NCBI GenBank assembly: GCA_976226885.1
Contig: OZ320316.1
Coordinates: 77,066,001-77,130,000 of the forward strand
Direction of reading: 5' to 3'
Length of the DNA: 64,000 bases
From: Iphione sp. A-MEVVRFRX5
Taxonomy: Eukaryota
The notes under the pieces were generated by a model, which was not told the origin of the DNA, did not search any database, and saw only the letters and a list, made by a program, of their open reading frames with translations. Both the position numbers and the translations under genes were made by a program. Below, piece after piece: positions 20,092 to 63,025 of the stretch. Position 1 is the first letter of the stretch, and every line of letters begins with the position of its first letter.

Positions 20092-23000
20092 GGAGACTGT
20101 TCTCAGTACATGTATACATGTACATGCAGAGAGATATCCACTTGACAGAACGAGGTGAGCGTGCTTTGGCGCTTTCAATTAGGTCCAGGAATTGTCTGCC
20201 AACCGCCTTAACGCACCATACGTCCATGGTCACGTGCGTTATTTCCATCCATACTTTTCACCTGACTGGACTCAGGCCACGTGTGTTAACCTTCGTTAAG
20301 TTATATTATTGATGCCGGTGCGGGTGGTGACCTAACGCATCTTGACACGCCCACCGGGATCAGCGATAGTGAACGCCATCCCACATACATATATCTATAT
20401 GTATACAGATGATAATGAGGTACAGACGATCCCGCTCGGGTTGCCAAGCTCAGCACACCTGTTGGTCCGATCCTGCTCGTGGTTGCGTCAAGTTATACTC
20501 GACGTAAGGGGCCCCTAGCCGGTGAAAAGGAGAGGGGGGCCCTCTCTCGTCCCTGACAACTTGTGTAAGCTGTTGAGGTACTAATCACTCACTGTTTAGT
20601 GAGAATCAGATCAGCCGCTCGCCCGTGGATCAGCGATAAGGACCGGCCAGCGTTCGGACCGAATGTCTGAGGTATTTTCGTCTTGTAAACGATAGCTCGG
20701 TTCGACCAAGCTCCAGCGGTCCTACAACACATTAAGCCGGGGGTAACCGTTCAGAGGACCGGTTCATGTAGTCTTCGATCTCGACTCATCCTTGTTATGA
20801 AAGGCCTTTTGTATATCGGCGGCATCTAGCAGTTTGGCGGTCACTTCTTCCTGAAATATCTATGCGTACTTTGATCCCAGTATTACACGTGCATGTCTGG
20901 CGCTGACAACCGGTTTGTTTGGCCCGTGGCGTGCCTGGTACCAAATTCAACACGTGTAGTGTTCATCACATTCCATACTGATATCCTTAAAGGCGAAGCC
21001 GCAAACAACAATGAAAACTGCCACAGTGCTCAGGGTTCCTTCAGAAAGCAGTAGAAAAGCAAAGCTGGCCCTCAGTAGGGCTTGTACGGTACGTTACTCG
21101 AAGCGTAAAGGTTCTATATAAGCAACGGCAGTTGCGTCCTCTTGCACCCAGCTGTCAACAGAATCAATACAATCCGGCGCGGCGGTTTTATATATGGGCA
21201 CAATACCTCTGTAGGTATGCTCGTAAAGCCGGACGTATTTTACATATAAAAAGACAGCCTAGAGAACCAATTTTATTGTGAGAGAACGGTGCTGAGGGTA
21301 CTCTGTGGATGCACAACATAAGTAGGACTACTTACAGTGGTTTGACTTGCTAGACATCAACGAGGCCTGAAGTACTTAATAATTCTTTTCAGAAACACCC
21401 AAAGTTTCAAATGATTTTAAGACAATTGGCTGCACTATGTAAATGGAAGGATAGGTATGTGTCCAAGGTGGAAAATAGGAATATTTTTAAAGAGAAAGGG
21501 GATTGGTTATTACCTAGGACACATCGATTTGAAGATTTGCCTTGGGCCGTAAACATTGACACTGCACTTGGTATTAAGCGCATCCCGTTGCATGCTTGCT
21601 ACATCAGACCAATTGTGTATTCTCGGCCACTCATTATGTTAGTGCGTTCTTGGGAATCTTTCCAGCTCCATTATACACGCCATCCTGTATTTGTCTGGGA
21701 GTATAATGTAGGTCAAGAACAATCAACGAAAATATTAACTCGAGTCTTCTGTATATTTGTAGCTTAACCCTACTGCTGCCTATAATATAAATGCACTTCG
21801 GGACATCTTATTGACCTAAATTTCGAGTATGAGCAATAGAGAAAGTATAATCCCTTATTTTTCAACAGCTGGTAACTACATGTACATTGTATTTGTATTG
21901 ACATGCACTTTAGAGAGGTGTTGCTACCAGAACTAGCAAGTAGGTCCATTCCTTGCTTTTTGTTTCCGATGGTGCAGTGTTCTAGTATCAGGGCGAAGGA
22001 CTCACAGCTCCCCTCTTTTTGTGGCAGCTACCACAGTTCCCACTCACAGAAAACATCTATCCTACCCTACTTTCGCGCACGCCTTCACTATCAGACCTAC
22101 TTGTACTATAAAGTAAATACCATTTTTTCTCCCTACAGATCAACAGCTATTTGATTTGTACGCATTCTAAAAGATAAGGTACGTGCTAAATGCATATGAA
22201 TTATGTGTGTAAAAATGCACGACAATATGAACAACTAGCTGAGGATAATTTGCTGATGTATCCAGAGTGGATGCCTAGCAGGCACCGGGCACAACTACTT
22301 CCAAAGAAAATGAAATGTTGTTTATAATGGTCGCTGCTAGTTCCCTTTCACTCTATCAAATATGAAAGACCAACACTATAGTTTTCACATATAAAACAAA
22401 TTGTTGGCGGTCAGACTTTTTTAATACAAGGCGCTGCATAGAGGGTAAGGGCACTGTTAAGATAGTGTAATTTTTGTTTACTTTTCAATGGATACCGAAA
22501 AATACGTTATTCTGTACACACAACCAACTTAATGACACTTTTCAAGGTCAATGGCTGATAATATAGAGGCCTGCTCTGAAATAAGCTCGTTTACAGGTTC
22601 TAGACGTGGTTAGCAAAAATGATGCTAACCAGAGCAATATGAGCATAGAGTCTCGAACAAAATACTGAGCGATGTTTAGAGTAGTGAACCTACTGCTGTG
22701 CTAAAAAGCAGGTAAACACCGGGATTGTTCTTGACTGGCCATATGATGCACAGCAGCATCGGCCAGCGCCAGACAACAACAAACCCCACGTACATCTATA
22801 TTCAAGAAGGGTAACATTCAACGAGAGCAACACATACGTACATGCACGTATGTACCTACATGTGTACTTCTGATTTTTCATGTTGACTTTGGAAGAAGCA
22901 CATGTAGCCACTATACGAAGTGGAAATTTATCAGATGTCTCAGTTTGGTTGCAGCCTGGTTTACACACATGTACATGGACACTGTACATGCACTCTGAAA

Positions 23001-25285
23001 TTTAACGCTAATTATTATTTTGGGCAAATACAAACCATTACAAATACTAAAAGGTGATTCAAAGTATGATCAACATTCTTGGGACGGTGCGTTCAACAGT
23101 GTGTCGTGCCTTAATATTCAATTCCCCAAATGAATCGATACCAACAACTATTCCTAAAAGTTTTCAATGGAAAGTTACTTAAATGCTCCTTTACACTACG
23201 AGATAGGAATCTTTTGAAGCCCTACTGGCTTAAAATAAAACAGCAGTCCCTGGAGGTAACTCTACCTAGCCGGTCCGAGCTTTCTGCACATATCCTGCTA
23301 AGGTGTCTGGGAGTATATTATACTGTTAACTACAGCCAGATGTCACGACCAAAGTGGAAACTGCTGCCACCTGCTTTTATGTAGGTAGGTACTACTCCGA
23401 TGTTCTATTAATATTCACTAACACGACACAACTATATAGGAGGCCTAAGAAAAGCCACTTCAGATATTTCAGAACGAAAGCTAATTTCAGACATTGTTTG
23501 TCGATCCTACAAATGGCCTTACAATTTTCATGGATATTTCTTTCAAAATATGTTAATCGTTCTGACAGTAGGCCATGTCGTGCAGAGTGTCTTCTATCAT
23601 TAAAATCTCAGTAGTAGAAAGGTCAAGGGTTTCCTGTCTGGCAGCTGACACGGCGATCTACCAGTTGTTCTCTACCTTGGTTATGTTGATATGGCGACCA
23701 CCTTCCACTGCCTTACGGCTACACGATATAAATGCATTATACGACATGGAGAAAGTTTCTCCTATAACATACCTACAAGAATGACATATTTGTACAAGGC
23801 GTTCGCTCTTGTCTGTAAAACGGTAACATTAAGCCTTAGCCTTTTCTACTGGTAAACTAAGTTTTTTTTCTAAAAAGTTGTGGCCATACAGTTGCTGAGA
23901 GACCATGTGCAGAACCACCCTCACATTCTGAAGTGTAGCGCCACACAAGTTTTGAGGCCATCGGTTTTCTATTTGGACGGTGCCAGTTGCACTTGTTGCC
24001 TATATATATATTCCCTTTGCATGGCGCTCCCTCGAAAATCCTTTATGCATTCTTTTTGGTTTGTGCATAAAATGCGCTGTAGAAACTCTAGCTAGGAACA
24101 CACTGATCAGTATGGAGAAGTATACAGAATTACAGGCAGATACCACGATGCCAGCAACTTTTGGTTCTTGCCACATCGTTCTGGTCTGTTGAAAGTAGTT
24201 TCTACTTGAAAATATTCTGTCCAAGCCACGTTGTTAGCTGTTCAACCGATGTCTTTATAACGTATTTTGTCCACTGTATTCGAATGTTTTATTCAGCTCT
24301 GTGCATCATGAATCTTTGCACTGGAATCACTGGTCCACATTTGGTCGGTCTTGGTTCGCTCTCCTGTTTTTAGTGGCAGGTTTCGTTTAAGGAGTCCAGA
24401 ACGTCGAAATAAACCAACGTGTATCTGTACAAACGGATGATTGCCCAAGGACAAAATATGGATATAAATTCAACGTGTACATGTACGATGTATACAACTA
24501 CATGTACTGATTTCGAATGGCATCACGGTTAGTGATATTTTTCGTAGCAAAGAACATGTAATGAATGCATTCATTATGCATCCCTTGGTGAAATGAATAT
24601 CTACATGTTAAATATGATCATCATGGCATCTGGCCAGGTGCGGGCCCCCTAAAAAGAAGACACATCTGATAGTTTTCAAGTGTCCAGCGGCTGGGTCACA
24701 CATATGGTAAATTGTACGGTCTGAATTTTGGTTAACATGACTTCGTCACGCCTCCACCCGAAAGGAAAACAAGTCTCCTCACCAAAGTGAGATGGGTAAC
24801 TCCATGTTGGGGATCGGTCTAGTAGGTGTATATGTACATGCATACACTTCTTTTGCCGGTCACCAGTGGTAATGAACTGTTGATGCATCTGTGGCAGTTG
24901 TCACATGTGACGCTTCCTCGTTCTAAAGGACATGTGGTATATAAACGCTGGGCCCTCTGGCTCCACTTGAGGAGATGCAAGATTGAATGGCCCCAACGTC
25001 TGTAGGTCCTTGAAAAATACGTGCTTGAAACCGAACCAGAGTCAACCGGCCGTGCGGTGTGCTTTTATATCGTTTTTTTGATACAGATTTCATAAAAGTT
25101 GAAGTCTGGTTCATTGGCAAGTTGTTGATCTGAAAACCACACGGTCTGTTTCACATACAGTACATTCAAACCATACATCAACATTGCAGACATAGTTCAG
25201 GGAAACACGCAGTCAATCAATACATTTATTATCCCCTTGCCTAAAATTTCAAGTCCATTACCGCCTCGCATATTTTCTTACTTAC

Positions 25286-25591
25286 AAAGGACAAGTCGAC
25301 GCGCGAAGGACTTGCTCGTGTCGGTCTTGAGCTCGTCGTGGTGGTCGTCGTCTCGTAGAGCGCCGACCGGCCGCCGGGGCCGACGAACGGGCTGGTGCGC
25401 ACCGGGCTCTCATGCCGCTCGAACACAATGCTGCGTTCCGGCGTACGGCGCGTAACAATGCGCAGCGGCCGCGACACATGCTCATAGGTGATCTGACGTT
25501 GGCGCGGACGCTGGCGGAAGGGCGACGTGAGGAACTCACGCGGCTCGTAGACCACCTGGCTAGAATGATGCTTGGCCGAGATCAGAGGCAT
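25286..25591 (-). CDS. Candidate alternative first coding exon, 102 aa MPLISAKHHSSQVVYEPREF...SPSRVDLSF
   Basis: ATG in GCTACCATG context, 306-nt GC-rich ORF ending exactly at TTT|gtaagt (phase 0). Confidence 0.7.
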
Positions 25592-28500
25592 GGTAGCACT
25601 TGACACTCCTCACGTTTAGGACACACTGACGGACGGTCTACCGAAACACTGCACTGGCGGTTAAAACAACGGCAGCTCTGGATCTTTTAGCAAAGGCTCC
25701 TGCCTGGATTCCCCGAACTTCAGGACACTTCCAAAAACAAAAACGAGACGGGAAGATGAGCGAAACGATGTTCAGGGAGGCAGGGTTGCTGTACTGCTTG
25801 GACAACAATCTCGGTGGCGAACGACGATTTGCTCAGACCAAAGATATCTATGTAGACAACGGTAGTCCGCCTGTGATTTCCTTCGGGACAATATCACGGA
25901 TCCACGAGATGAGATATTTCGTTCCGCCGGCCCTGTGGGACTCAAGGAGAGGTAGCCTGGAGGCTGCTGCAGCTTCGACACGAGAATGGAGACTGGCCCC
26001 GAGAAACTTGCACACAGCCGCACAGAGAAGAAACTCAGTGGGGAGAGGGTCGGAAGCGGCTAGTGGTTGATGCGCCGCCAAGTCACTGTCAGCGCCTACC
26101 TGCCTACCAGTCGGCCTGCCCTGCCTGCCGGCTCAGTGCTCAGTCTAGGCTAACTGCTCCCAGGTCGCCACCCCAAGGTGGGTGGGCGGCTGAGCAATAT
26201 CTATGGATGCAAACATGAAGCCAGCGGCGGCTGCTGCTGCTGCTGTGCGAGAGGAGGTGGTGGGGGGCGCTCTGTGGGCATGTCCTGCTTCTTCAGGTTG
26301 TAAGGTGAATATATAGAAAGGTATGTTCTGGAGTGAGTAAGAGACGTACACAATGTACATTTGTAGGAGCAACTCAGAGCCTCACTACGACCGTCGCCAG
26401 ATGACGGGGCTTTCTTTTTGGGCTATTTACCGGCGATTTTAAACACGTCATTACATTTCAACTCAGGTCAGAACTTGTACCGAATCGGATGCATTCTGCG
26501 ACACATTTTGACCCGAGTAACTACATGTACCCTCTTTCCACCTTCATCCTGTGTGATAAAGCGGAGAGCTACTAAATGGAAAAGAGTCACAAAAGTAAAG
26601 AAAGGACTTTTCTATTTGAAAAAAAAGTACAGGATGTTTGTCATTCCTTCCTAACCCCCTCTTGGTGAAAGGATTTATTACCATCTGAAGCCTTCCTGAC
26701 CTATACAGTAAACTAAGTAGAGGTAAGGCTTACACAGCACAATAGTCCTTACAGCACGGTAGCGAGGCGACCAACGAGATCAATCATAGTCAGGATGCAT
26801 CCTGTCTCTAGGTGGCGCCACTGATCTTTTCGAAGAGGAAAATCACCATGTGGTTTTTGGATAAACTCGCTTTTTAAAAAGAGTCTTCGATGTAGTTGAC
26901 TTGACTGAGACTGCTATCTATAATTTGCTTATGTTAATCAGCAGCAAAGGATTTTTCTTACACAGCTGTTAAGTGAATCTCTTCTTTAAGCAGGGTTACT
27001 CCATTTCGTTCTCCAGATGGTGATTTGTTAAAAGGAATACAAAGGGGAAGGTATGGCCGTGTAACACCTGTGTGATAATTCTTACCCTAACACGTGTTTT
27101 CATTTCATATCTTGAAGTACACCAGTTCAGCCTGCTTTTTTCCCCAAAAGTCGGTCGCGCTGCTCCAGTAGAAGGTCGCAAAATAATCTCGCAACCCTGC
27201 CCTGTCAAATATGATTCTCAGTGACACTGGTGGATTCTACCTTACTCTATTTTACTCTGTAGTTCCTACCAACATTTACACATGCACAGCACATGCCGCT
27301 CTTAACAACGTTTAATAAAAAGGACAGGGACGTGGATGCTACAAAACGCTTCACATTGACATGTTTCTGAACGAAGATTTTCTTCCACAGTCCTTTCTGT
27401 ATGGTAAAAAACTGCATGAGTTGATTCGAGTCGAATGCTCAATACCAGCGAAGGTTTTAAATGTGATCACTTCGCCAGGTAATATCTTATCGCCTGATGG
27501 TTATGGATGTCCGATAGCAAAAGCCATAAGGCTTACGTCGAAATGGGTTTTATCAGCTACCACCTCTTAATGGGTACCAATTGTGCTACCATCCACCTGT
27601 GTAGGAAGACGACATCTTTTGAACTTAAAGAACAAAGCTCAGCAACTAATACACGCATTCAATACGTGTACTACACACTTCAGAAGTACATGTAGTACGA
27701 AAAGCCATCAAATTGTGTTTTTAAGGTAGCAAGTTATGCACATTTCGGAGCTTTACTGTAGATAGCTTATCTACAACTGTTGCTAGGACATGTACAAACA
27801 AACACCGCTATGCACACCACTCGTATGGTTGATTATAGGAGACTTGCATTTTTAGGTTTTCGCTTTCAGTAAGCATTTCGGATTTTCCTTTTGAGATCTA
27901 TTACAAAGCAGTAAAACGGAACCACAGAAAGGTTCGACCTAGGGATGTTTTCGTTAGTTCGGAAAAGCTGCATCATGTGAGTCCCTTTACAACGTCGATC
28001 ACCGCAAACTTATTCAAGGATATCATCCTCAGCCTTACCTGCGATGCAGAAGTAGTCTCTAGGGGGTGGACACCACAGGCGCAGATTCCTCAGCAACAAC
28101 AATACGCTATTTAGCCTGGTAGCCATAGACCGGACTCAACAGGCTGGTGGAAACTCAGCAAGTCAGCTCTGGATGTGGTGTCTATGTGTGCGCTTCTGCT
28201 CGACTGAACGGCGAGCGGATCAAAGTCCAAGCATTATTAGCTATTAGTCTCCTGATCAGCAACGACAGGAGGAAGGTCCACAGCAACAGGCGAATCAATG
28301 TTGGACTGCTCCGCTGTGTTCGCAGAGATTGACCCTGCTTAGAAATATGGACTTAGATAGGGACCTTAATAGGACAGAGATGCATGAAGCAGCTGGTTAC
28401 ATGTATGCCTCATACCAGATAGCAACGTTACTGTCACTTGGGTCACAAACAAAGTCTGGAAAATACTCACACAGGTTTTTAGTTTTGGTTTTGCCCTTCT

Positions 28501-30134: not shown

Positions 30135-30227
30135 CTGGAAGTGGAGAATGATGGTCCATATGAGGCCAAGGGTAAGCTTCGGGTTTCCGTCCACAATCTC
30201 ATCTGGCCGAATATTCACCAACCGAAT
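30135..30227 (-). CDS. MACF1/DST/PLEC-like: CH1 exon equivalent to plectin exon 5: [31 protein letters not shown]
   Basis: Acceptor tttatcacattag, 93 nt, donor gttagc; ends in phase 0, so the next (CH2) exon must start in phase 0. Confidence 0.97.
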
Positions 30228-31982: not shown

Positions 31983-32060
31983 CCCTTTATACTTCAAGAA
32001 GTCTAATGCTATCTGGACGTTTTGCAACTTGTGAAACCGCATGTGGCCCCTCTCTCGAGG
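31983..32060 (-). CDS. MACF1/DST/PLEC-like: CH1 exon equivalent to plectin exon 4: [26 protein letters not shown]
   Basis: Acceptor ccgatttatag, 78 nt, phase 0/0, donor gtgagt; matches [20 protein letters not shown]. Confidence 0.97.
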
Positions 32061-32288: not shown

Positions 32289-32378
32289 CATGGAATCCTG
32301 GGAGAGAACCTCAAGCAGCGTAATGAGGTTATGACCATCACGTAAATCTTCGAAGAGGTCAGTGACATGGCGGTGGAC
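32289..32378 (-). CDS. MACF1/DST/PLEC-like: CH1 exon equivalent to plectin exon 3: [30 protein letters not shown]
   Basis: Acceptor ctttaaatag, 90 nt, phase 0/0, donor gtgagt; contains [20 protein letters not shown]. Missed by the ORF track because it is short. Confidence 0.97.
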
Positions 32379-32944
32379 CTATTTAAAGTAGGGAGCATGT
32401 TTTAGGTGTATGTATGACGTTAATGAACGCTAGGCTGCCATAATATGTCGTGTAAAAAGTAAGTATGAAAGGCCAGGCACGGCGTCATTATAAATAATTG
32501 TTCCGATGTTTACTTGAATATCAACGAGGTCTGGTTGACACTTTGAAAGAGAGTACATGTAGTTTGAAACGACACATTAAAATCTAAAAGCTATGTTTAT
32601 ACTTTTTTTCTTTCACTGTGTTTCAGCCCAGTCTTCACCACAAATGACATATTTTACAAATGGATTTATTTTCAGCACCACATGGCAATACAACTTAAAA
32701 TATTGAAGCAGATTCAGTATTTACACCAAGGAAGAGAGTAGCAGTGGAGGCGAACTTAAGTCAATGCATGGCAGGGACCACTTACATGATTAAAGAAACT
32801 TCATCCTAAGTCTTCAATAGTAAGGGGTGACCTTTTACGGTGAAGACTTATATTTAAAGCCATACAGATAATTCAAACACCCATCAATCTTTCCACATTC
32901 ACACCTTACACTTTAGGTGAAGGTGAGCAAATTGAAAGACAAAC

Positions 32945-32962
32945 CTTGGGAAACCTCCAATG
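32945..32962 (-). CDS. 18-nt microexon HWRFPK (plectin 2-alpha-like)
   Basis: ttcttctttctgattatgtgcag|CATTGGAGGTTTCCCAAG|gtttgt; phase 0/0; begins HWR like HWRAE. Confidence 0.7.
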
Positions 32963-35900: not shown

Positions 35901-36752
35901 CTTATGATACGCATATCCTAAACGGTAAGCATGAATCTCAATGGCTTATAGATATGTGTTCTCTAGAATATAGTTGCACACGCTGGTAAACTTTAATAAA
36001 ACGATATTCCTGTTTTCCCTGACCGTCATAGCTCCACTGAAACAACACAATCCCACTTTCTCCCACAAACACCTCAGTTCATTGACGGAACGATCATGTC
36101 AGAACTTTATAAAGCAATCTTCGTCGTGCCTTTACTCATAGAACGGTTTCGAGACTAGAGATGCTTGAAAGCTCGAACACGCTAAAAACTAGGACTTCCC
36201 ACGTAGTCTCGTTGAAAAATCTTTCTTTCTCTCATGTGATTGTCGTCCATTTTAGCACAATTGTACGCTAAAATTCCCATTATTCGTGCACCCCCTTACA
36301 GTTTAGCATGACACCATTTGCATGGGAAGGGTTGTGACAATTAAAAAGCATGCGATACCCCCCATACACCATCAGATCCACATGCAATGCACTGACATCT
36401 GCTTCTGTTTTTCTTATAGTAGGTGTTAGGATTAATATAGCAACCTTTTAACTTTTTTCTTGACGATCCATTCCTTTAAACACTCGTTATTCCGCAAGAC
36501 ACAAAACAAAAATCAGTTTGAGTATGGCCTCGTTGTGTTAGTTTTCTTCCAAGCAACAAAATCGTCCCATTTAGTTTTTTGTAAAGGGGGGTCCCTGAAC
36601 GGCACGTGTGATGATGCGTCAGTCTTTAAAGGCAACCATTTCGCTTTGCTCCAAATGTTAACCATGACCGCAAGGCCAAATAGAGGACGAACATGGGAGC
36701 AGGAGAGGTTAGAGAACATGAACATCCATAAACCAAATTACAGTCAGCTTAC

Positions 36753-36767
36753 CTTTTGGTACCGATG
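36753..36767 (-). CDS. 15-nt microexon HRYQK (plectin 2-alpha-like)
   Basis: ctgttatattcttattttcaaacag|CATCGGTACCAAAAG|gtaagc: strong acceptor and donor, phase 0/0, same size and position as plectin 2-alpha (HWRAE). Confidence 0.75.
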
Positions 36768-39700
36768 CTGTTTGAAAATAAGAATATAACAGATGCAATT
36801 ACTGCTCCAATACTCATGAAAATCAACGTGTTTTACACACTTTCGATGGGCTATTTTTATGACTATGTATCAAGAAGGCACAAATTTCTTCGTATGACAC
36901 TAGTATATGTGATTCTATGACTGTGGTTTATCATACCAAGTCTACTTATGAAATTATCCTGTCACATATAGTAGTGGTAAGTACCAAGTCATCAGCAGTC
37001 CAATCCAGTTGTCAATGATGAAAAAAACTGGATTCCCATAATGACTGAGAGTCTGGCACAAACAGAGTGTCACAGAAGTATGAAGACACAATATACCAAC
37101 AAAAACGCCTCTGTTCATTGCCTACTTCAAAGAACGTGATGCTCTCTATTTCATCGCGACGCCATACATACAGGCATTCATTCTTCGAACGAACACAATC
37201 TGCTGGTTCAAAAAATGCCCCACAGCATTAACTAACGGTTACGGTTGCGCTATATATAACTTAATGAAACCAATTACGAATCGCACCTACTCGTCCTTTT
37301 GGTCGGAGTGAGAAAAACAGAATTTCAATGAGGGTGTGAGAGCGACCCAAGCAAAGTCTCTGGAAAATACACTGGATTTCCCAAGTGGCAACAGGCGATA
37401 GTTCATGCATTCAGGAAACAAATATTTCAAGTTCCGAATGCATGTACATGTACATGCAGATCACTATCAACTGTCATTTGGTGTAGCACTTCAGGACATG
37501 GTAATCTCGGAGTCATCGGTATACAATCTTAAGGGGAATAAATATTGATAGCCAAAATAGGAAACTGCACATCAGTTAAATCGGAGGGAATTCATCTCAA
37601 ATATGCCACACCATCACGTTAATGATGCGATCTTGAAAGATGGCTCGAAGTTGAGTTTTAAAGAATCCATAGTAAAAAAATTCCTTACTTTATTCGCGAT
37701 GAGTGGCAGCATTGTTAGATATACTTACACATATCCAAAACTAATTAAAAAATGGTGTCATATGTACATGTATTTTGCTACACTGTGTGAGCCAATTGCT
37801 CAAACTAAAATCTGATGGGTTTAAGGTGAATTGTTTGAAAATTACTTAATTTGTCGCACCACAAATTGCCATTAAAAAACATTTAGTAACTTTAACCTTC
37901 ATAGGTATTGCAGTTGGTGTGATATCATATACACGGTCGTTCTGAATCAGTTAATACCCCTGGCCATGGCGGCTTGAAAAAAGGCGTCCTAATTATACGG
38001 GCTGAAGTAAGGGTTACATCAGTCACAATGGTCCCCCCCGCGGGCAGAAGTAAGGATCGTTGTCAAAAAGCCATACACATGTACACCTCCGCTCTTAAAG
38101 GTCTCCAACCACGCGCCATTATTAGACTAAAAGCGGCTCTTTGGGTGGCGATGCATTCATCACGATTAAAAAAAGACTGGGAGGTGGAGTGGGGGATGGC
38201 ATGCAACATCGAATGCAGGCATTCGGGTTGAGAGCGGTCGGTACGGGTCTCCGAATATAGGCAATCGTGCAATGCCGAAATATAAAATTCAAACGCTAGC
38301 TCACTAAGAGAGACATTGTATACATGTACTTGAGAGCGAACATAGGCGCACAGTTAGGTAGCCTCTTTATCTTGGAATAATACGTGTACTGCCTACGTGT
38401 TGGTACCCATCGTCTGTACGTCCGATTGAGGAACCTGATGGATTCAGCCTCGTAGTTCTTCTAGTCAGCGAAGCATTGTGAAAATAATGCATTCTCTTCT
38501 TTTCATGGATATTCATCACTCTTGTTGCTTTGTCGGGCACGTTGTGGCTTAGAAAATAGCTAAGTACATTTTTACACTAGATAAAGTTGGTAAACCCGAA
38601 TTTTCATGTGACCATGCTTCTCGTTTGTGTGTTCGTGCAACACAGATGGATGTTTTTTTTACTGAAGCAAGTTCCAGTCAAAGAAGCACAGATCCTTGTT
38701 ATTGACATGGACACATGGACAAGAAGGACCGTCAAATGAAAACTGGGACTGAAAGCCTTTTTGTGGCACAACATGCCTGCGCGGACACTGCTTGGTGTAT
38801 TTATCAGTTCAAGCAGAAATTTCCTGCCATAAACCTTCTCGTAATACTAAAACATTCACACTTGACGTGTGCTGCTTAAATATATCGAACCGAGTTTATT
38901 CTATCCTGAGTCTCGCCATACACCGGGCTACTTTCGTGGGAAAAAATGGACGTTGTCTTTGGGACCAACATGACATGAATCTCGGGCTTTTGTATACATA
39001 TATATTAGTTATTCAGACGTTGAACTTCCGTGATGTCCTTGTTAAACATCAGTAGTAGCAGTGATGACTGATGCACGCGATTCGGATCAATGGTTTTCGC
39101 CCTCTCCCTGTCTGTCTCCCTCACACAACTGATGCTGACCAAACGCAGAATATTTCGCAAAGACTTGGAAAGTTAGTATGGCTTTGTTCCACTAATACAA
39201 AACATTGCCACCTCTAATATACAAATCGATGGCGTTTATTTCTGAGATGCATGTTTCAAGCCGTTCATTTAACGGTTGAAATGTCTCTGCGTGCTATTTG
39301 CTATTATCCCTGAAAAATCAGGGAATTGGATGGGGACTGACATTGTGGGAGGGAGGGAAGGAATGTCTGCGTGGGAGGTTTTTACAGATGTCAGTGTATG
39401 GTTGACTAATACAATAATATGAAGGAAAACTTCGGGATCGGGTAATTCAAAGAAAGTAAGGCATTATCCGGAGATGTAAATGCCGACAGGACGCCCGTGT
39501 TGAAAGAAAGCCACGTATTACTTGCAGCGACGAAACCCAGTTTCCTTATGCACTGAGTATGTTCAGTTATCATTTTCGGCGAATTGAATGGTGCGTCAAT
39601 GATTGATAACTTATCAGATCTTATCAGTATATTGATGCCGGTAGACATGAAACACTTTCAAGAGCTGGGTTCGTGGAACAGGTCGTTTTTGTTCTAAGTC

Positions 39701-46294: not shown

Positions 46295-46435
46295 NNNNNN
46301 NNNNNNNNNNNNNNNNNNNNNNNNNNNNNNNNNNNNNNNNNNNNNNNNNNNNNNNNNNNNNNNNNNNNNNNNNNNNNNNNNNNNNNNNNNNNNNNNNNNN
46401 NNNNNNNNNNNNNNNNNNNNNNNNNNNNNNNNNNN
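46295..46435. other. Assembly gap (N run)
   Basis: 141 consecutive N. Confidence 1.
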
Positions 46436-61920: not shown

Positions 61921-62083
61921 NNNNNNNNNNNNNNNNNNNNNNNNNNNNNNNNNNNNNNNNNNNNNNNNNNNNNNNNNNNNNNNNNNNNNNNNNNNNNNNN
62001 NNNNNNNNNNNNNNNNNNNNNNNNNNNNNNNNNNNNNNNNNNNNNNNNNNNNNNNNNNNNNNNNNNNNNNNNNNNNNNNNNNN
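61921..62083. other. Assembly gap (N run)
   Basis: 163 consecutive N, adjacent to a minisatellite and probably a collapsed array. Confidence 1.
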
Positions 62084-62963: not shown

Positions 62964-63025
62964 CTTTATTAAATGTTTATTGACCCATTTGGTAAAGGTC
63001 TTCTTTTGTACAGAGTCGCGTTCAT
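62964..63025 (-). CDS. MACF1/DST/PLEC-like: CH1 exon equivalent to plectin exon 2: (D)[20 protein letters not shown], phase 1 in, phase 0 out
   Basis: Acceptor ttttttttcag, 62-nt exon, donor gtgagt; peptide nearly identical to plectin [21 protein letters not shown]. Confidence 0.97.

What the first reader, a model, noticed from the sequence alone, without database searches (positions are those of the whole stretch)
36753..36767. 15-nt microexon HRYQK: candidate pre-vertebrate counterpart of plectin exon 2-alpha
Seen: textbook splice sites around 15 nt, phase 0/0, between the KHLIK and VHRHV exons, with an upstream TGC (aattgcatctg) and a downstream minus-strand TGCATG near 36381-36386. Established: mouse plectin 2-alpha (HWRAE, 15 nt) inserts at exactly this junction and was reported to increase actin binding; upstream UGC motifs mark SRRM3/4(eMIC)-dependent microexons and UGCAUG is the Rbfox site. 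Inference: an ancient, tissue-regulated tuning switch in the actin-binding surface.
Basis: partly seen in the sequence, partly recalled or inferred. Interest (0 to 1): 0.72.

Follow-up and report, generated by a model that had tools for sequence, protein, structure and literature searches.

The report
Second microexon in plakin actin-binding domain
The 15-base HRYQK segment is very probably a real, evolutionarily conserved optional mini-exon in the actin-binding head of a plectin/MACF1-type gene, but the true counterpart of mammalian plectin exon 2-alpha is its neighbour HWRFPK, 3.8 kb further on, which is shared by annelids, molluscs, arthropods and vertebrates.

Summary
On the minus strand, 36767..36753 reads CATCGGTACCAAAAG (HRYQK). 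It is open, phase 0/0, and flanked by ...ttttcaaacag| and |gtaagc. It lies in the 30.6-kb intron between the 62-nt KHLIK exon and the 90-nt VHRHV exon of a plakin gene.

Sequence alone is not decisive. About 0.66 equally good in-frame mini-exons are expected by chance in this intron (0.04 for exactly 15 nt).

Conservation settles it. A divergent second species (L007; introns unalignable) has a 15-nt HRYYK exon with the same splice sites. It is also the top-ranked candidate there and sits in the same order.

Both species carry a second microexon nearer exon 3: HWRFPK at window 32962..32945 and HWRFQK in L007. This HW type occurs at the same junction in Lottia, Pinctada, Argonauta, Capitella, insect, spider and crustacean-like loci. 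It matches vertebrate plectin 2-alpha (HWRAE).

So HRYQK is most likely a lineage-restricted paralogue that lacks the Trp codon, not the direct 2-alpha orthologue. The genome looks protostome (other agents' notes say annelid), not pre-vertebrate chordate.

No RNA run was listed, so inclusion and tissue pattern remain untested. The UGC and UGCAUG motifs are present but statistically weak. The neighbouring exon was already noted on this window (s1-347260).

The parts
36753..36767 (-). Microexon A: 15 nt, HRYQK, phase 0/0. This is the finding.
   Evidence: It is conserved as HRYYK at L007:2927-2941 with the same splice sites. It is the most similar of 24,166 candidate pairs.
36768..36800 (-). Acceptor region of A: pyrimidine-rich tract, ACAG acceptor, TGC at 36797..36795 (-30)
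   Evidence: The core TTTC..ACAG is conserved in L007. L007 has its TGC at -23.
36747..36752 (-). Donor of A: gtaagc (strong)
   Evidence: 10.9 bits. L007 has gtaaga at 10.4 bits.
36381..36386 (-). UGCAUG 368 nt downstream of A (possible Rbfox site)
   Evidence: L007 has UGCAUG at +219 and +387. The background density is 0.56 per kb, so this is weak evidence.
32945..32962 (-). Microexon B: 18 nt, HWRFPK, acceptor ..gattatgtgcag|, weak conserved donor |gtttgt. It is the orthologue of the pan-bilaterian HW microexon and of plectin 2-alpha.
   Evidence: Counterparts: HWRFQK in L007, HWRFSQ in Lottia, Pinctada and Argonauta, HWILCK in Capitella, HWKYMK in Menopon. Further HW exons appear.
62964..63025 (-). 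Plakin exon '2' (62 nt): D|ERDSVQKKTFTKWVNKHLIK, CH1 helix A
32289..32378 (-). Plakin exon '3' (90 nt): [30 protein letters not shown]
31983..32060 (-). Plakin exon '4' (78 nt): [26 protein letters not shown]
30135..30227 (-). Plakin exon '5' (93 nt): [31 protein letters not shown], end of CH1

Best explanation
36753-36767 (minus strand) is a genuine protein-coding microexon (A, HRYQK) of a plakin (plectin/MACF1/dystonin/Shot-type) gene. It lies between the exons that encode the end of CH1 helix A and the following segment. When included, it adds five mostly basic or aromatic residues directly after ...KWVNKHLIK.

A is the upstream member of a tandem pair. The downstream member (B, HWRFPK, 32945-32962) is the orthologue of an ancient bilaterian HW microexon that vertebrates retain as plectin exon 2-alpha. 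A is most likely an old, lineage-restricted duplicate of B that lost the Trp codon: H-(W)-R-[Y/F]-x-K.

By analogy with 2-alpha, inclusion is expected to be optional and cell-type specific. It would lengthen helix A next to actin-binding site 1 and so tune binding of the head domain to F-actin (and possibly microtubules).

Shown here: the sequence, frame, splice sites, conservation and position. Inferred: that it is spliced in, that it is alternative, the A/B paralogy, and its effect on binding.
For: The exact sequence and junctions are. A's splice sites are as strong as the constitutive exons, and it is the top candidate of 1345 in the intron.

In a divergent species (L007, ENA contig) introns do not align and exon 3 is 78% identical in DNA. 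There the top candidate in the 10 kb upstream of exon 3 is a 15-nt HRYYK. Its flanks are TTTC..ACAG| and |GTAAG, and one of the exon differences is synonymous (CGG/CGA).

blastn between the loci finds only collinear islands: A, B, exons 3-5 and a few others. The A-A pair is the most similar of 24,166 same-length candidate pairs, 22/31 against a background of 0.26 +/- 0.07. B-B ranks second.

The order (A then B) and the sizes (15/18 nt) are the same in both species. The block is unique in the window.

The same junction holds proven or modelled microexons elsewhere: plectin HWRAE/HWKAE, and arthropod HW[KRN]Y.[KEQ]. PDB entries 1SH5, 1SH6 and 1MB8 contain the HWRAE insert, so the CH1 fold tolerates it.

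An AF2 model of a spider protein with HWRYLE runs helix A through the insert. The literature reports that 2-alpha enhances actin binding, and that with 3-alpha it enhances microtubule binding.
Against: There is no transcript evidence. No RNA run was listed, and no protein fragment containing HRYQK exists in the 31-98 aa range of the protein collection.

Conservation rests on a single second species of unknown identity. No A-type exon was seen in the Lottia, Pinctada, Argonauta, Capitella or Menopon introns.

With two sequences and 15 nt, coding selection cannot be separated from conservation of a splicing element. The A/B paralogy rests on a 5-6 residue pattern. The AF2 confidence at the insert is only about 63.
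Confidence: 0.75

Rival explanations
1. Chance pseudo-exon: a fortuitous AG-15 nt-GT arrangement in a long intron that is never spliced in.
For: About 0.66 equally good open 3n candidates are expected per 30-kb intron. There is no RNA or protein evidence of inclusion.
Against: The same 15-nt exon, with the same splice sites, frame, rank and relative position, is present in a species whose introns are otherwise unalignable.
Confidence: 0.05
2. A conserved splicing element rather than a coding exon. For example, a decoy exon whose splice sites help remove the 30-kb intron in steps or control use of microexon B, with little or none of it reaching mature mRNA.
For: Conservation is concentrated on the splice sites and the exon core. 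The host intron is very long. Two species cannot demonstrate protein-level selection.
Against: It is not a recursive site: the bases after the AG are CATCGG, not GTAAGT, so no 5' splice site is regenerated. The frame is open and phase 0/0 in both species. The peptide (H-R-Y-x-K) resembles the microexon peptides used at this junction in other phyla.
Confidence: 0.12
3. One reading: HRYQK itself is the direct orthologue of vertebrate plectin exon 2-alpha.
For: It has the same junction, the same 15-nt length and phase, and starts with His followed by a basic residue. A flatfish plectin-like model also has a Trp-less insert, HRRGPE.
Against: The neighbour B (HWRFPK) carries the HW+basic signature of 2-alpha and is the exon found at this junction in every other phylum sampled, often with conserved flanks ([T/C]GCAG| and |GTTTGT). 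A-type exons were found only in the window and L007.
Confidence: 0.08

Closest known systems
Plectin exon 2-alpha (mouse/human PLEC; 15 nt, HWRAE)
   Same: It uses the same intron (after the 62-nt exon ending KHL.K, before the 90-nt exon), has the same 15-nt length and phase 0/0, and starts with His plus a basic residue. The insert is tolerated by the CH1 fold (PDB 1SH5, 1MB8).
   Different: A lacks the Trp and the acidic end. It coexists with a second, more 2-alpha-like microexon (B) in the same intron. Inclusion, tissue pattern and effect on binding are unknown here.
Protostome HW microexon at the same junction. Gene models and loci: Menopon HWKYMK, Pieris HWKYLK, spiders HWRYLE, Diaphorina HWNYFQ, Lottia/Pinctada/Argonauta HWRFSQ, Capitella HWILCK.
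   Same: Same junction and phase. A's peptide fits the pattern H-(W)-[KR]-[YF]-x-[KQE] with one residue missing.
   Different: Those exons are 18 nt and keep the Trp. Most have [T/C]GCAG acceptors, and the spiralian ones a weak GTTTGT donor. A has a strong GTAAG donor and its UGC lies far upstream.
SRRM3/4 (eMIC)-dependent neural microexons
   Same: Size 3-27 nt, strong 5' splice site, and a UGC upstream of the acceptor in both species.
   Different: The UGC lies upstream of the pyrimidine tract (-30/-23) rather than between tract and AG. No UCUC...UGC bipartite element is evident. Microexon B (UGCAG|) fits this class better.
Plectin exon 3-alpha and the arthropod Cys-rich cassette (TYTCLHVC...CC)
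   Same: These are further optional small exons that decorate the same part of CH1 in other lineages, so the site is a hotspot for cassette exons.
   Different: They differ in position or sequence. No Cys-rich cassette exists in the window intron, and the exon 3/4 intron here is only 228 nt.

Membership tests
Plectin 2-alpha-type cassette microexon of the plakin actin-binding domain | Lies in the intron between the 62-nt exon ending ...KWVNKHL.K (phase 0) and the 90-nt exon beginning ..RH..DL[FY]EDL | tested here: met
   Exon sizes are 62/90/78/93 nt.
Plectin 2-alpha-type cassette microexon of the plakin actin-binding domain | 15 nt (18 nt in protostomes), open, phase 0/0, canonical AG/GT | tested here: met
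Plectin 2-alpha-type cassette microexon of the plakin actin-binding domain | Peptide signature His-Trp-basic at the start | tested here: not met
   A is HRYQK in the window and HRYYK in L007. The signature is met by the neighbour B, HWRFPK.
Plectin 2-alpha-type cassette microexon of the plakin actin-binding domain | Exon and splice sites conserved between species | tested here: met
   (one further species only)
Plectin 2-alpha-type cassette microexon of the plakin actin-binding domain | Optional, tissue-restricted inclusion (brain/muscle in mammals) | not testable with these tools
   No RNA run was listed, so read laying could not be used.
Plectin 2-alpha-type cassette microexon of the plakin actin-binding domain | Inclusion increases actin (or microtubule) binding of the ABD | not testable with these tools
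   Known only from the literature for mouse plectin.
SRRM3/4 (eMIC)-dependent microexon | UGC between the branch point/pyrimidine tract and the AG, close to the 3' splice site | tested here: inconclusive
   UGC is at -30 in the window and -23 in L007, upstream of the tract. The chance of one UGC in 40 nt is roughly 45%, which is my own estimate.
Rbfox-activated exon | UGCAUG within a few hundred nt downstream, conserved | tested here: inconclusive
   Found at +368 in the window and at +219 and +387 in L007. The chance probability is 0.24 for one and 0.03 for two in 500 nt.
Recursive splice site / RS-exon | The acceptor AG is directly followed by a GURAGU-like 5' splice site | tested here: not met
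   The bases after the AG are CATCGG.

The most novel reading that the evidence does not exclude
The exon 2/3 junction of plakins carries one of the few microexons that predate the protostome-deuterostome split (the HW type, kept as plectin 2-alpha). In this annelid-like lineage it has duplicated into two independently regulated switches acting on the same actin-binding helix. A has a strong donor and downstream UGCAUG, which is Rbfox-like. B has a UGCAG acceptor and a weak GUUUGU donor, which is eMIC-like. Together they would give up to four head-domain variants.
Probability: 0.3. Interest if true: 0.7.

Novelty: new member of a known kind. Interest (0 to 1): 0.55.

Why it matters
Plectin exon 2-alpha is a textbook case of a five-residue insert that changes how a giant cytolinker binds actin and microtubules in nerve and muscle. 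This work suggests the switch is not a vertebrate invention. An HW microexon sits at the identical junction in annelid, mollusc, arthropod and vertebrate genes.

At least one lineage also keeps a second, Trp-less copy, which is the finding here. That gives a natural series of variants (none, A, B, A+B) for testing how the C-terminal end of CH1 helix A tunes filament binding. It also adds a candidate to the short list of microexons conserved across Bilateria.

I found no report of the invertebrate counterpart in the searched literature. However, several public gene models already include the HW exon.

Tried and rejected
1. RNA evidence. The look-up of sequencing runs (rna) listed no run, so read laying could not be used.

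2. Word search with the junction peptide containing HRYQK. There was no hit with the insert; only mammalian plectin HWRAE came back.

3. Exact-pattern scan of JGI metagenome contigs for the A exon with its flanks gave 0 hits. The protein-guided scan gave 17 invertebrate loci, with more HW exons but no A type and no close relative.

4. I walked 27 kb downstream of exon 2 in another ENA contig (L026-L028).

5. Repeat or transposon origin is rejected: the block is unique in the window. There is no Rfam family in 32-38 kb.

6. Recursive splice site is rejected on sequence.

7. The shared TAATTGCAT about 30 nt upstream of window A and of the Menopon exon looked like a conserved enhancer. It is absent from the closer relative L007, so I treat it as branch-point-like AT-rich coincidence.

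8. No Cys-rich arthropod-type cassette exists in the window intron.

9. The species could not be identified from CH1, because the best matches are about 84% identical in many phyla.

10. Two human plectin protein fragments returned by the protein search (P0018, P0271) sat among the 59 rows of the alignment used for the fold. No human contig was fetched or searched.

11. The two N gaps in the intron (46295-46435, 61921-62083) were left untouched.

Full report
**What is there.** On the minus strand the window carries the 5' part of a plakin (plectin/MACF1/dystonin/Shot-type) gene. Four exons encode calponin-homology domain 1:
- 63025..62964 (62 nt, D|ERDSVQKKTFTKWVNKHLIK)
- 32378..32289 (90 nt, [12 protein letters not shown]...SQDSM)
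- 32060..31983 (78 nt)
- 30227..30135 (93 nt)

The first two exons are separated by a 30,585-nt intron with two N gaps, which I left untouched. The reported segment, 36767..36753, reads CAT CGG TAC CAA AAG (HRYQK). It is preceded by ...tattcttattttcaaacag and followed by gtaagc.

**Chance.** I used a simple splice-site matrix. The segment is the best of 1345 open, frame-preserving AG..GT candidates of 3-51 nt in this intron. Its sites score 5.3 + 10.9 bits, within the range of the gene's constitutive exons (3.7-8.1 and 7.3-12.0). Markov-simulated introns contain on average 0.66 candidates at least as good, or 0.04 if the length must be 15 nt. The window alone therefore cannot decide.

**RNA.** The run search listed no RNA run, so no reads could be laid. 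A word search with the junction peptide including HRYQK found no such protein. It did return mammalian plectin fragments reading KHLIK-HWRAE-AQRHI. PDB entries 1SH5, 1SH6 and 1MB8 contain the same insert. Papers confirm three points about plectin:
- 2-alpha encodes 5 residues between exons 2 and 3.
- It is neural/muscle specific.
- It enhances actin binding, and together with 3-alpha it enhances microtubule binding.

**A conserved microexon at this junction, but a different one.** I searched the exon-3 peptide against cluster representatives, and then searched with two hits. Many invertebrate gene models have an insert directly after KHL.K:
- HWKYMK (louse Menopon)
- HWKYLK (Pieris)
- HWRYLE (spiders)
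- HWNYFQ (Diaphorina)
- HWKYSK (aphid)

In arthropods these are often followed by a Cys-rich cassette. Fetching the DNA showed an 18-nt exon with good splice sites in every exon 2-3 intron examined:

| Locus | Peptide |
|---|---|
| Menopon L001:12668 | HWKYMK |
| Lottia L002:34229 | HWRFSQ |
| Pinctada L004:17490 | HWRFSQ |
| Argonauta L005:40772 | HWRFSQ |
| Capitella L003:6047 | HWILCK |
| L008 | HWKFNR |
| L009 | HWKYVK |
| L011 | HWTVVE |
| L019 | HWTAAE |
| L020 | HWTVLE |

The window has its own copy, HWRFPK at 32962..32945, 566 nt upstream of exon 3. Its flanks are ..gattatgtgcag| and |gtttgt, which align with the mollusc copies. Among the three molluscs all differences inside the exon are synonymous. 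This HW exon shares the junction, the phase and the His-Trp-basic start with vertebrate HW[RK]AE. It is the natural counterpart of plectin 2-alpha.

**Is HRYQK real?** One representative hit (P0003) is an ORF over exon 3 on a 1.6-Mb eukaryotic contig of an ENA metagenome assembly (L007). Its exon 3 is AHRHITDLFEGL...SQDSL and its exon 4 differs from the window's by one residue.
- In the 10 kb upstream of its exon 3, the top-ranked microexon candidate is a 15-nt HRYYK: ..ttatttcgtacag|CAT CGA TAC TAC AAG|gtaaga.
- HWRFQK lies 5.3 kb downstream of it. This is the same order and the same sizes as in the window.
- blastn between L007 and the window aligns only collinear islands: A, B, exons 3-5 and a few further blocks. 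The introns themselves do not align, and exon 3 is 78% identical.
- Of 24,166 same-length candidate pairs between the two introns, A-A is the most similar (22 of 31 positions outside AG/GT). B-B is second (22 of 34). The background is 0.26 +/- 0.07.
- The aligned core is TTTC..ACAG|CATCG.TAC.A.AAG|GTAAG.T.
- The block is unique in the window and matches no Rfam family.

I conclude that A is under purifying selection together with its splice sites and frame. It is very probably a real exon.

**Relation of A to B and to 2-alpha.** A (HRYQK, HRYYK) fits B (HWRFPK, HWRFQK) and the arthropod consensus HW[KR]Y.K once the Trp is removed: H-(W)-R-[Y/F]-x-K. No A-like 15-nt candidate exists in the Lottia, Pinctada, Argonauta, Capitella or Menopon introns. 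The simplest reading is an old tandem duplication of the HW exon in the lineage that includes the window species and L007, followed by loss of one codon. This is inference from a very short pattern. A flatfish plectin-like model with HRRGPE shows that Trp-less versions also arose elsewhere.

**Regulation.**
- A has a strong donor in both species, and a UGC at -30 (window) or -23 (L007). This UGC is upstream of the pyrimidine tract. In typical SRRM3/4 targets the UGC lies between the tract and the AG.
- B has that typical layout (UGCAG|) in the window, the three molluscs and several crustacean-like contigs. It also has a conserved weak GTTTGT donor.
- UGCAUG occurs downstream of A in both species (+368; +219 and +387). 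It does not occur downstream of B in the window, L007 or L008.
- It does occur within 500 nt of B in Lottia, Pinctada, Argonauta, Capitella and Menopon.
- The motif is common in these introns (0.56 per kb), so one copy in 500 nt has P = 0.24.

The regulatory proposals are therefore leads, not findings.

**Likely mechanism.** The insert follows the last residues of CH1 helix A, next to actin-binding site 1. An AlphaFold model of a spider protein with only the HW exon included continues helix A through the insert before the loop (helix 23-58, insert 54-59). Confidence there is modest, with pLDDT about 63. By analogy with 2-alpha, A would lengthen and add positive charge to this helix end, and so change affinity for F-actin or microtubules. 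This step is inferred.

**Taxon.** CH1 is too conserved to place the species; best matches are about 84% identical in several phyla. The B flanks resemble mollusc sequences most. Other agents' unchecked notes on this genome say annelid. Nothing points to a chordate, so 'pre-vertebrate' should be read as 'invertebrate (protostome)'.

**Verdict.** However, the direct 2-alpha counterpart is the neighbouring exon, and the tissue-switch mechanism is untested. Transcript evidence is the missing piece.

Noticed in passing
window 32945-32962 (minus): An 18-nt microexon, HWRFPK, with a UGCAG acceptor and a weak GTTTGT donor. It is orthologous to HW microexons in molluscs, Capitella and arthropods, and to plectin 2-alpha.
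   Followed up: yes
window 25333-25560 (minus; ORF 25241-25606) vs L007:17183-17437: A conserved coding block (47 aligned residues, 72% identical: QVVYEPREFLTSPFRQRPRQ...TRRTPERSIVFE) in the intron after the last CH1 exon. It is probably an alternative exon or alternative start that bypasses CH1.
   Followed up: partly
window 26253-26326, 24869-24911, 22657-22719 (minus): Further short islands that align collinearly with L007 (16358-16426, 17729-17770, 19682-19742). Their nature is unknown.
   Followed up: no
L001:12788-12850 and proteins P0167-P0178: Arthropod plakin genes carry a second cassette right after the HW microexon. It is about 21 residues and Cys-rich (TYTCLHVC...CC.P), and is conserved in insects, spiders and a shrimp. 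It is absent from the window intron.
   Followed up: partly
L003:6311-6334 (Capitella teleta): A 24-nt cassette, RKIVFIPK, with good splice sites downstream of the Capitella HW exon. The public gene model includes it instead of the HW exon.
   Followed up: no
proteins P0242, P0278, P0261: Other inserts at the same junction: HRRGPE in a flatfish plectin-like model, a 3-residue CRS in Mytilus, and RPHNHPH in an unidentified Logan/ENA contig.
   Followed up: no
window 32939-32944; L007, L002, L004, L008, L020: The weak donor GTTTGT of the HW microexon is conserved across distant spiralian loci, which suggests regulated rather than constitutive recognition.
   Followed up: partly
L002:34190-34246 (Lottia gene model P0248): The public Lottia model extends the HW exon upstream (RSTQTVQFTFMQ-HWRFSQ). 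The conserved ..catgcag acceptor suggests the true exon is only the last 18 nt.
   Followed up: partly
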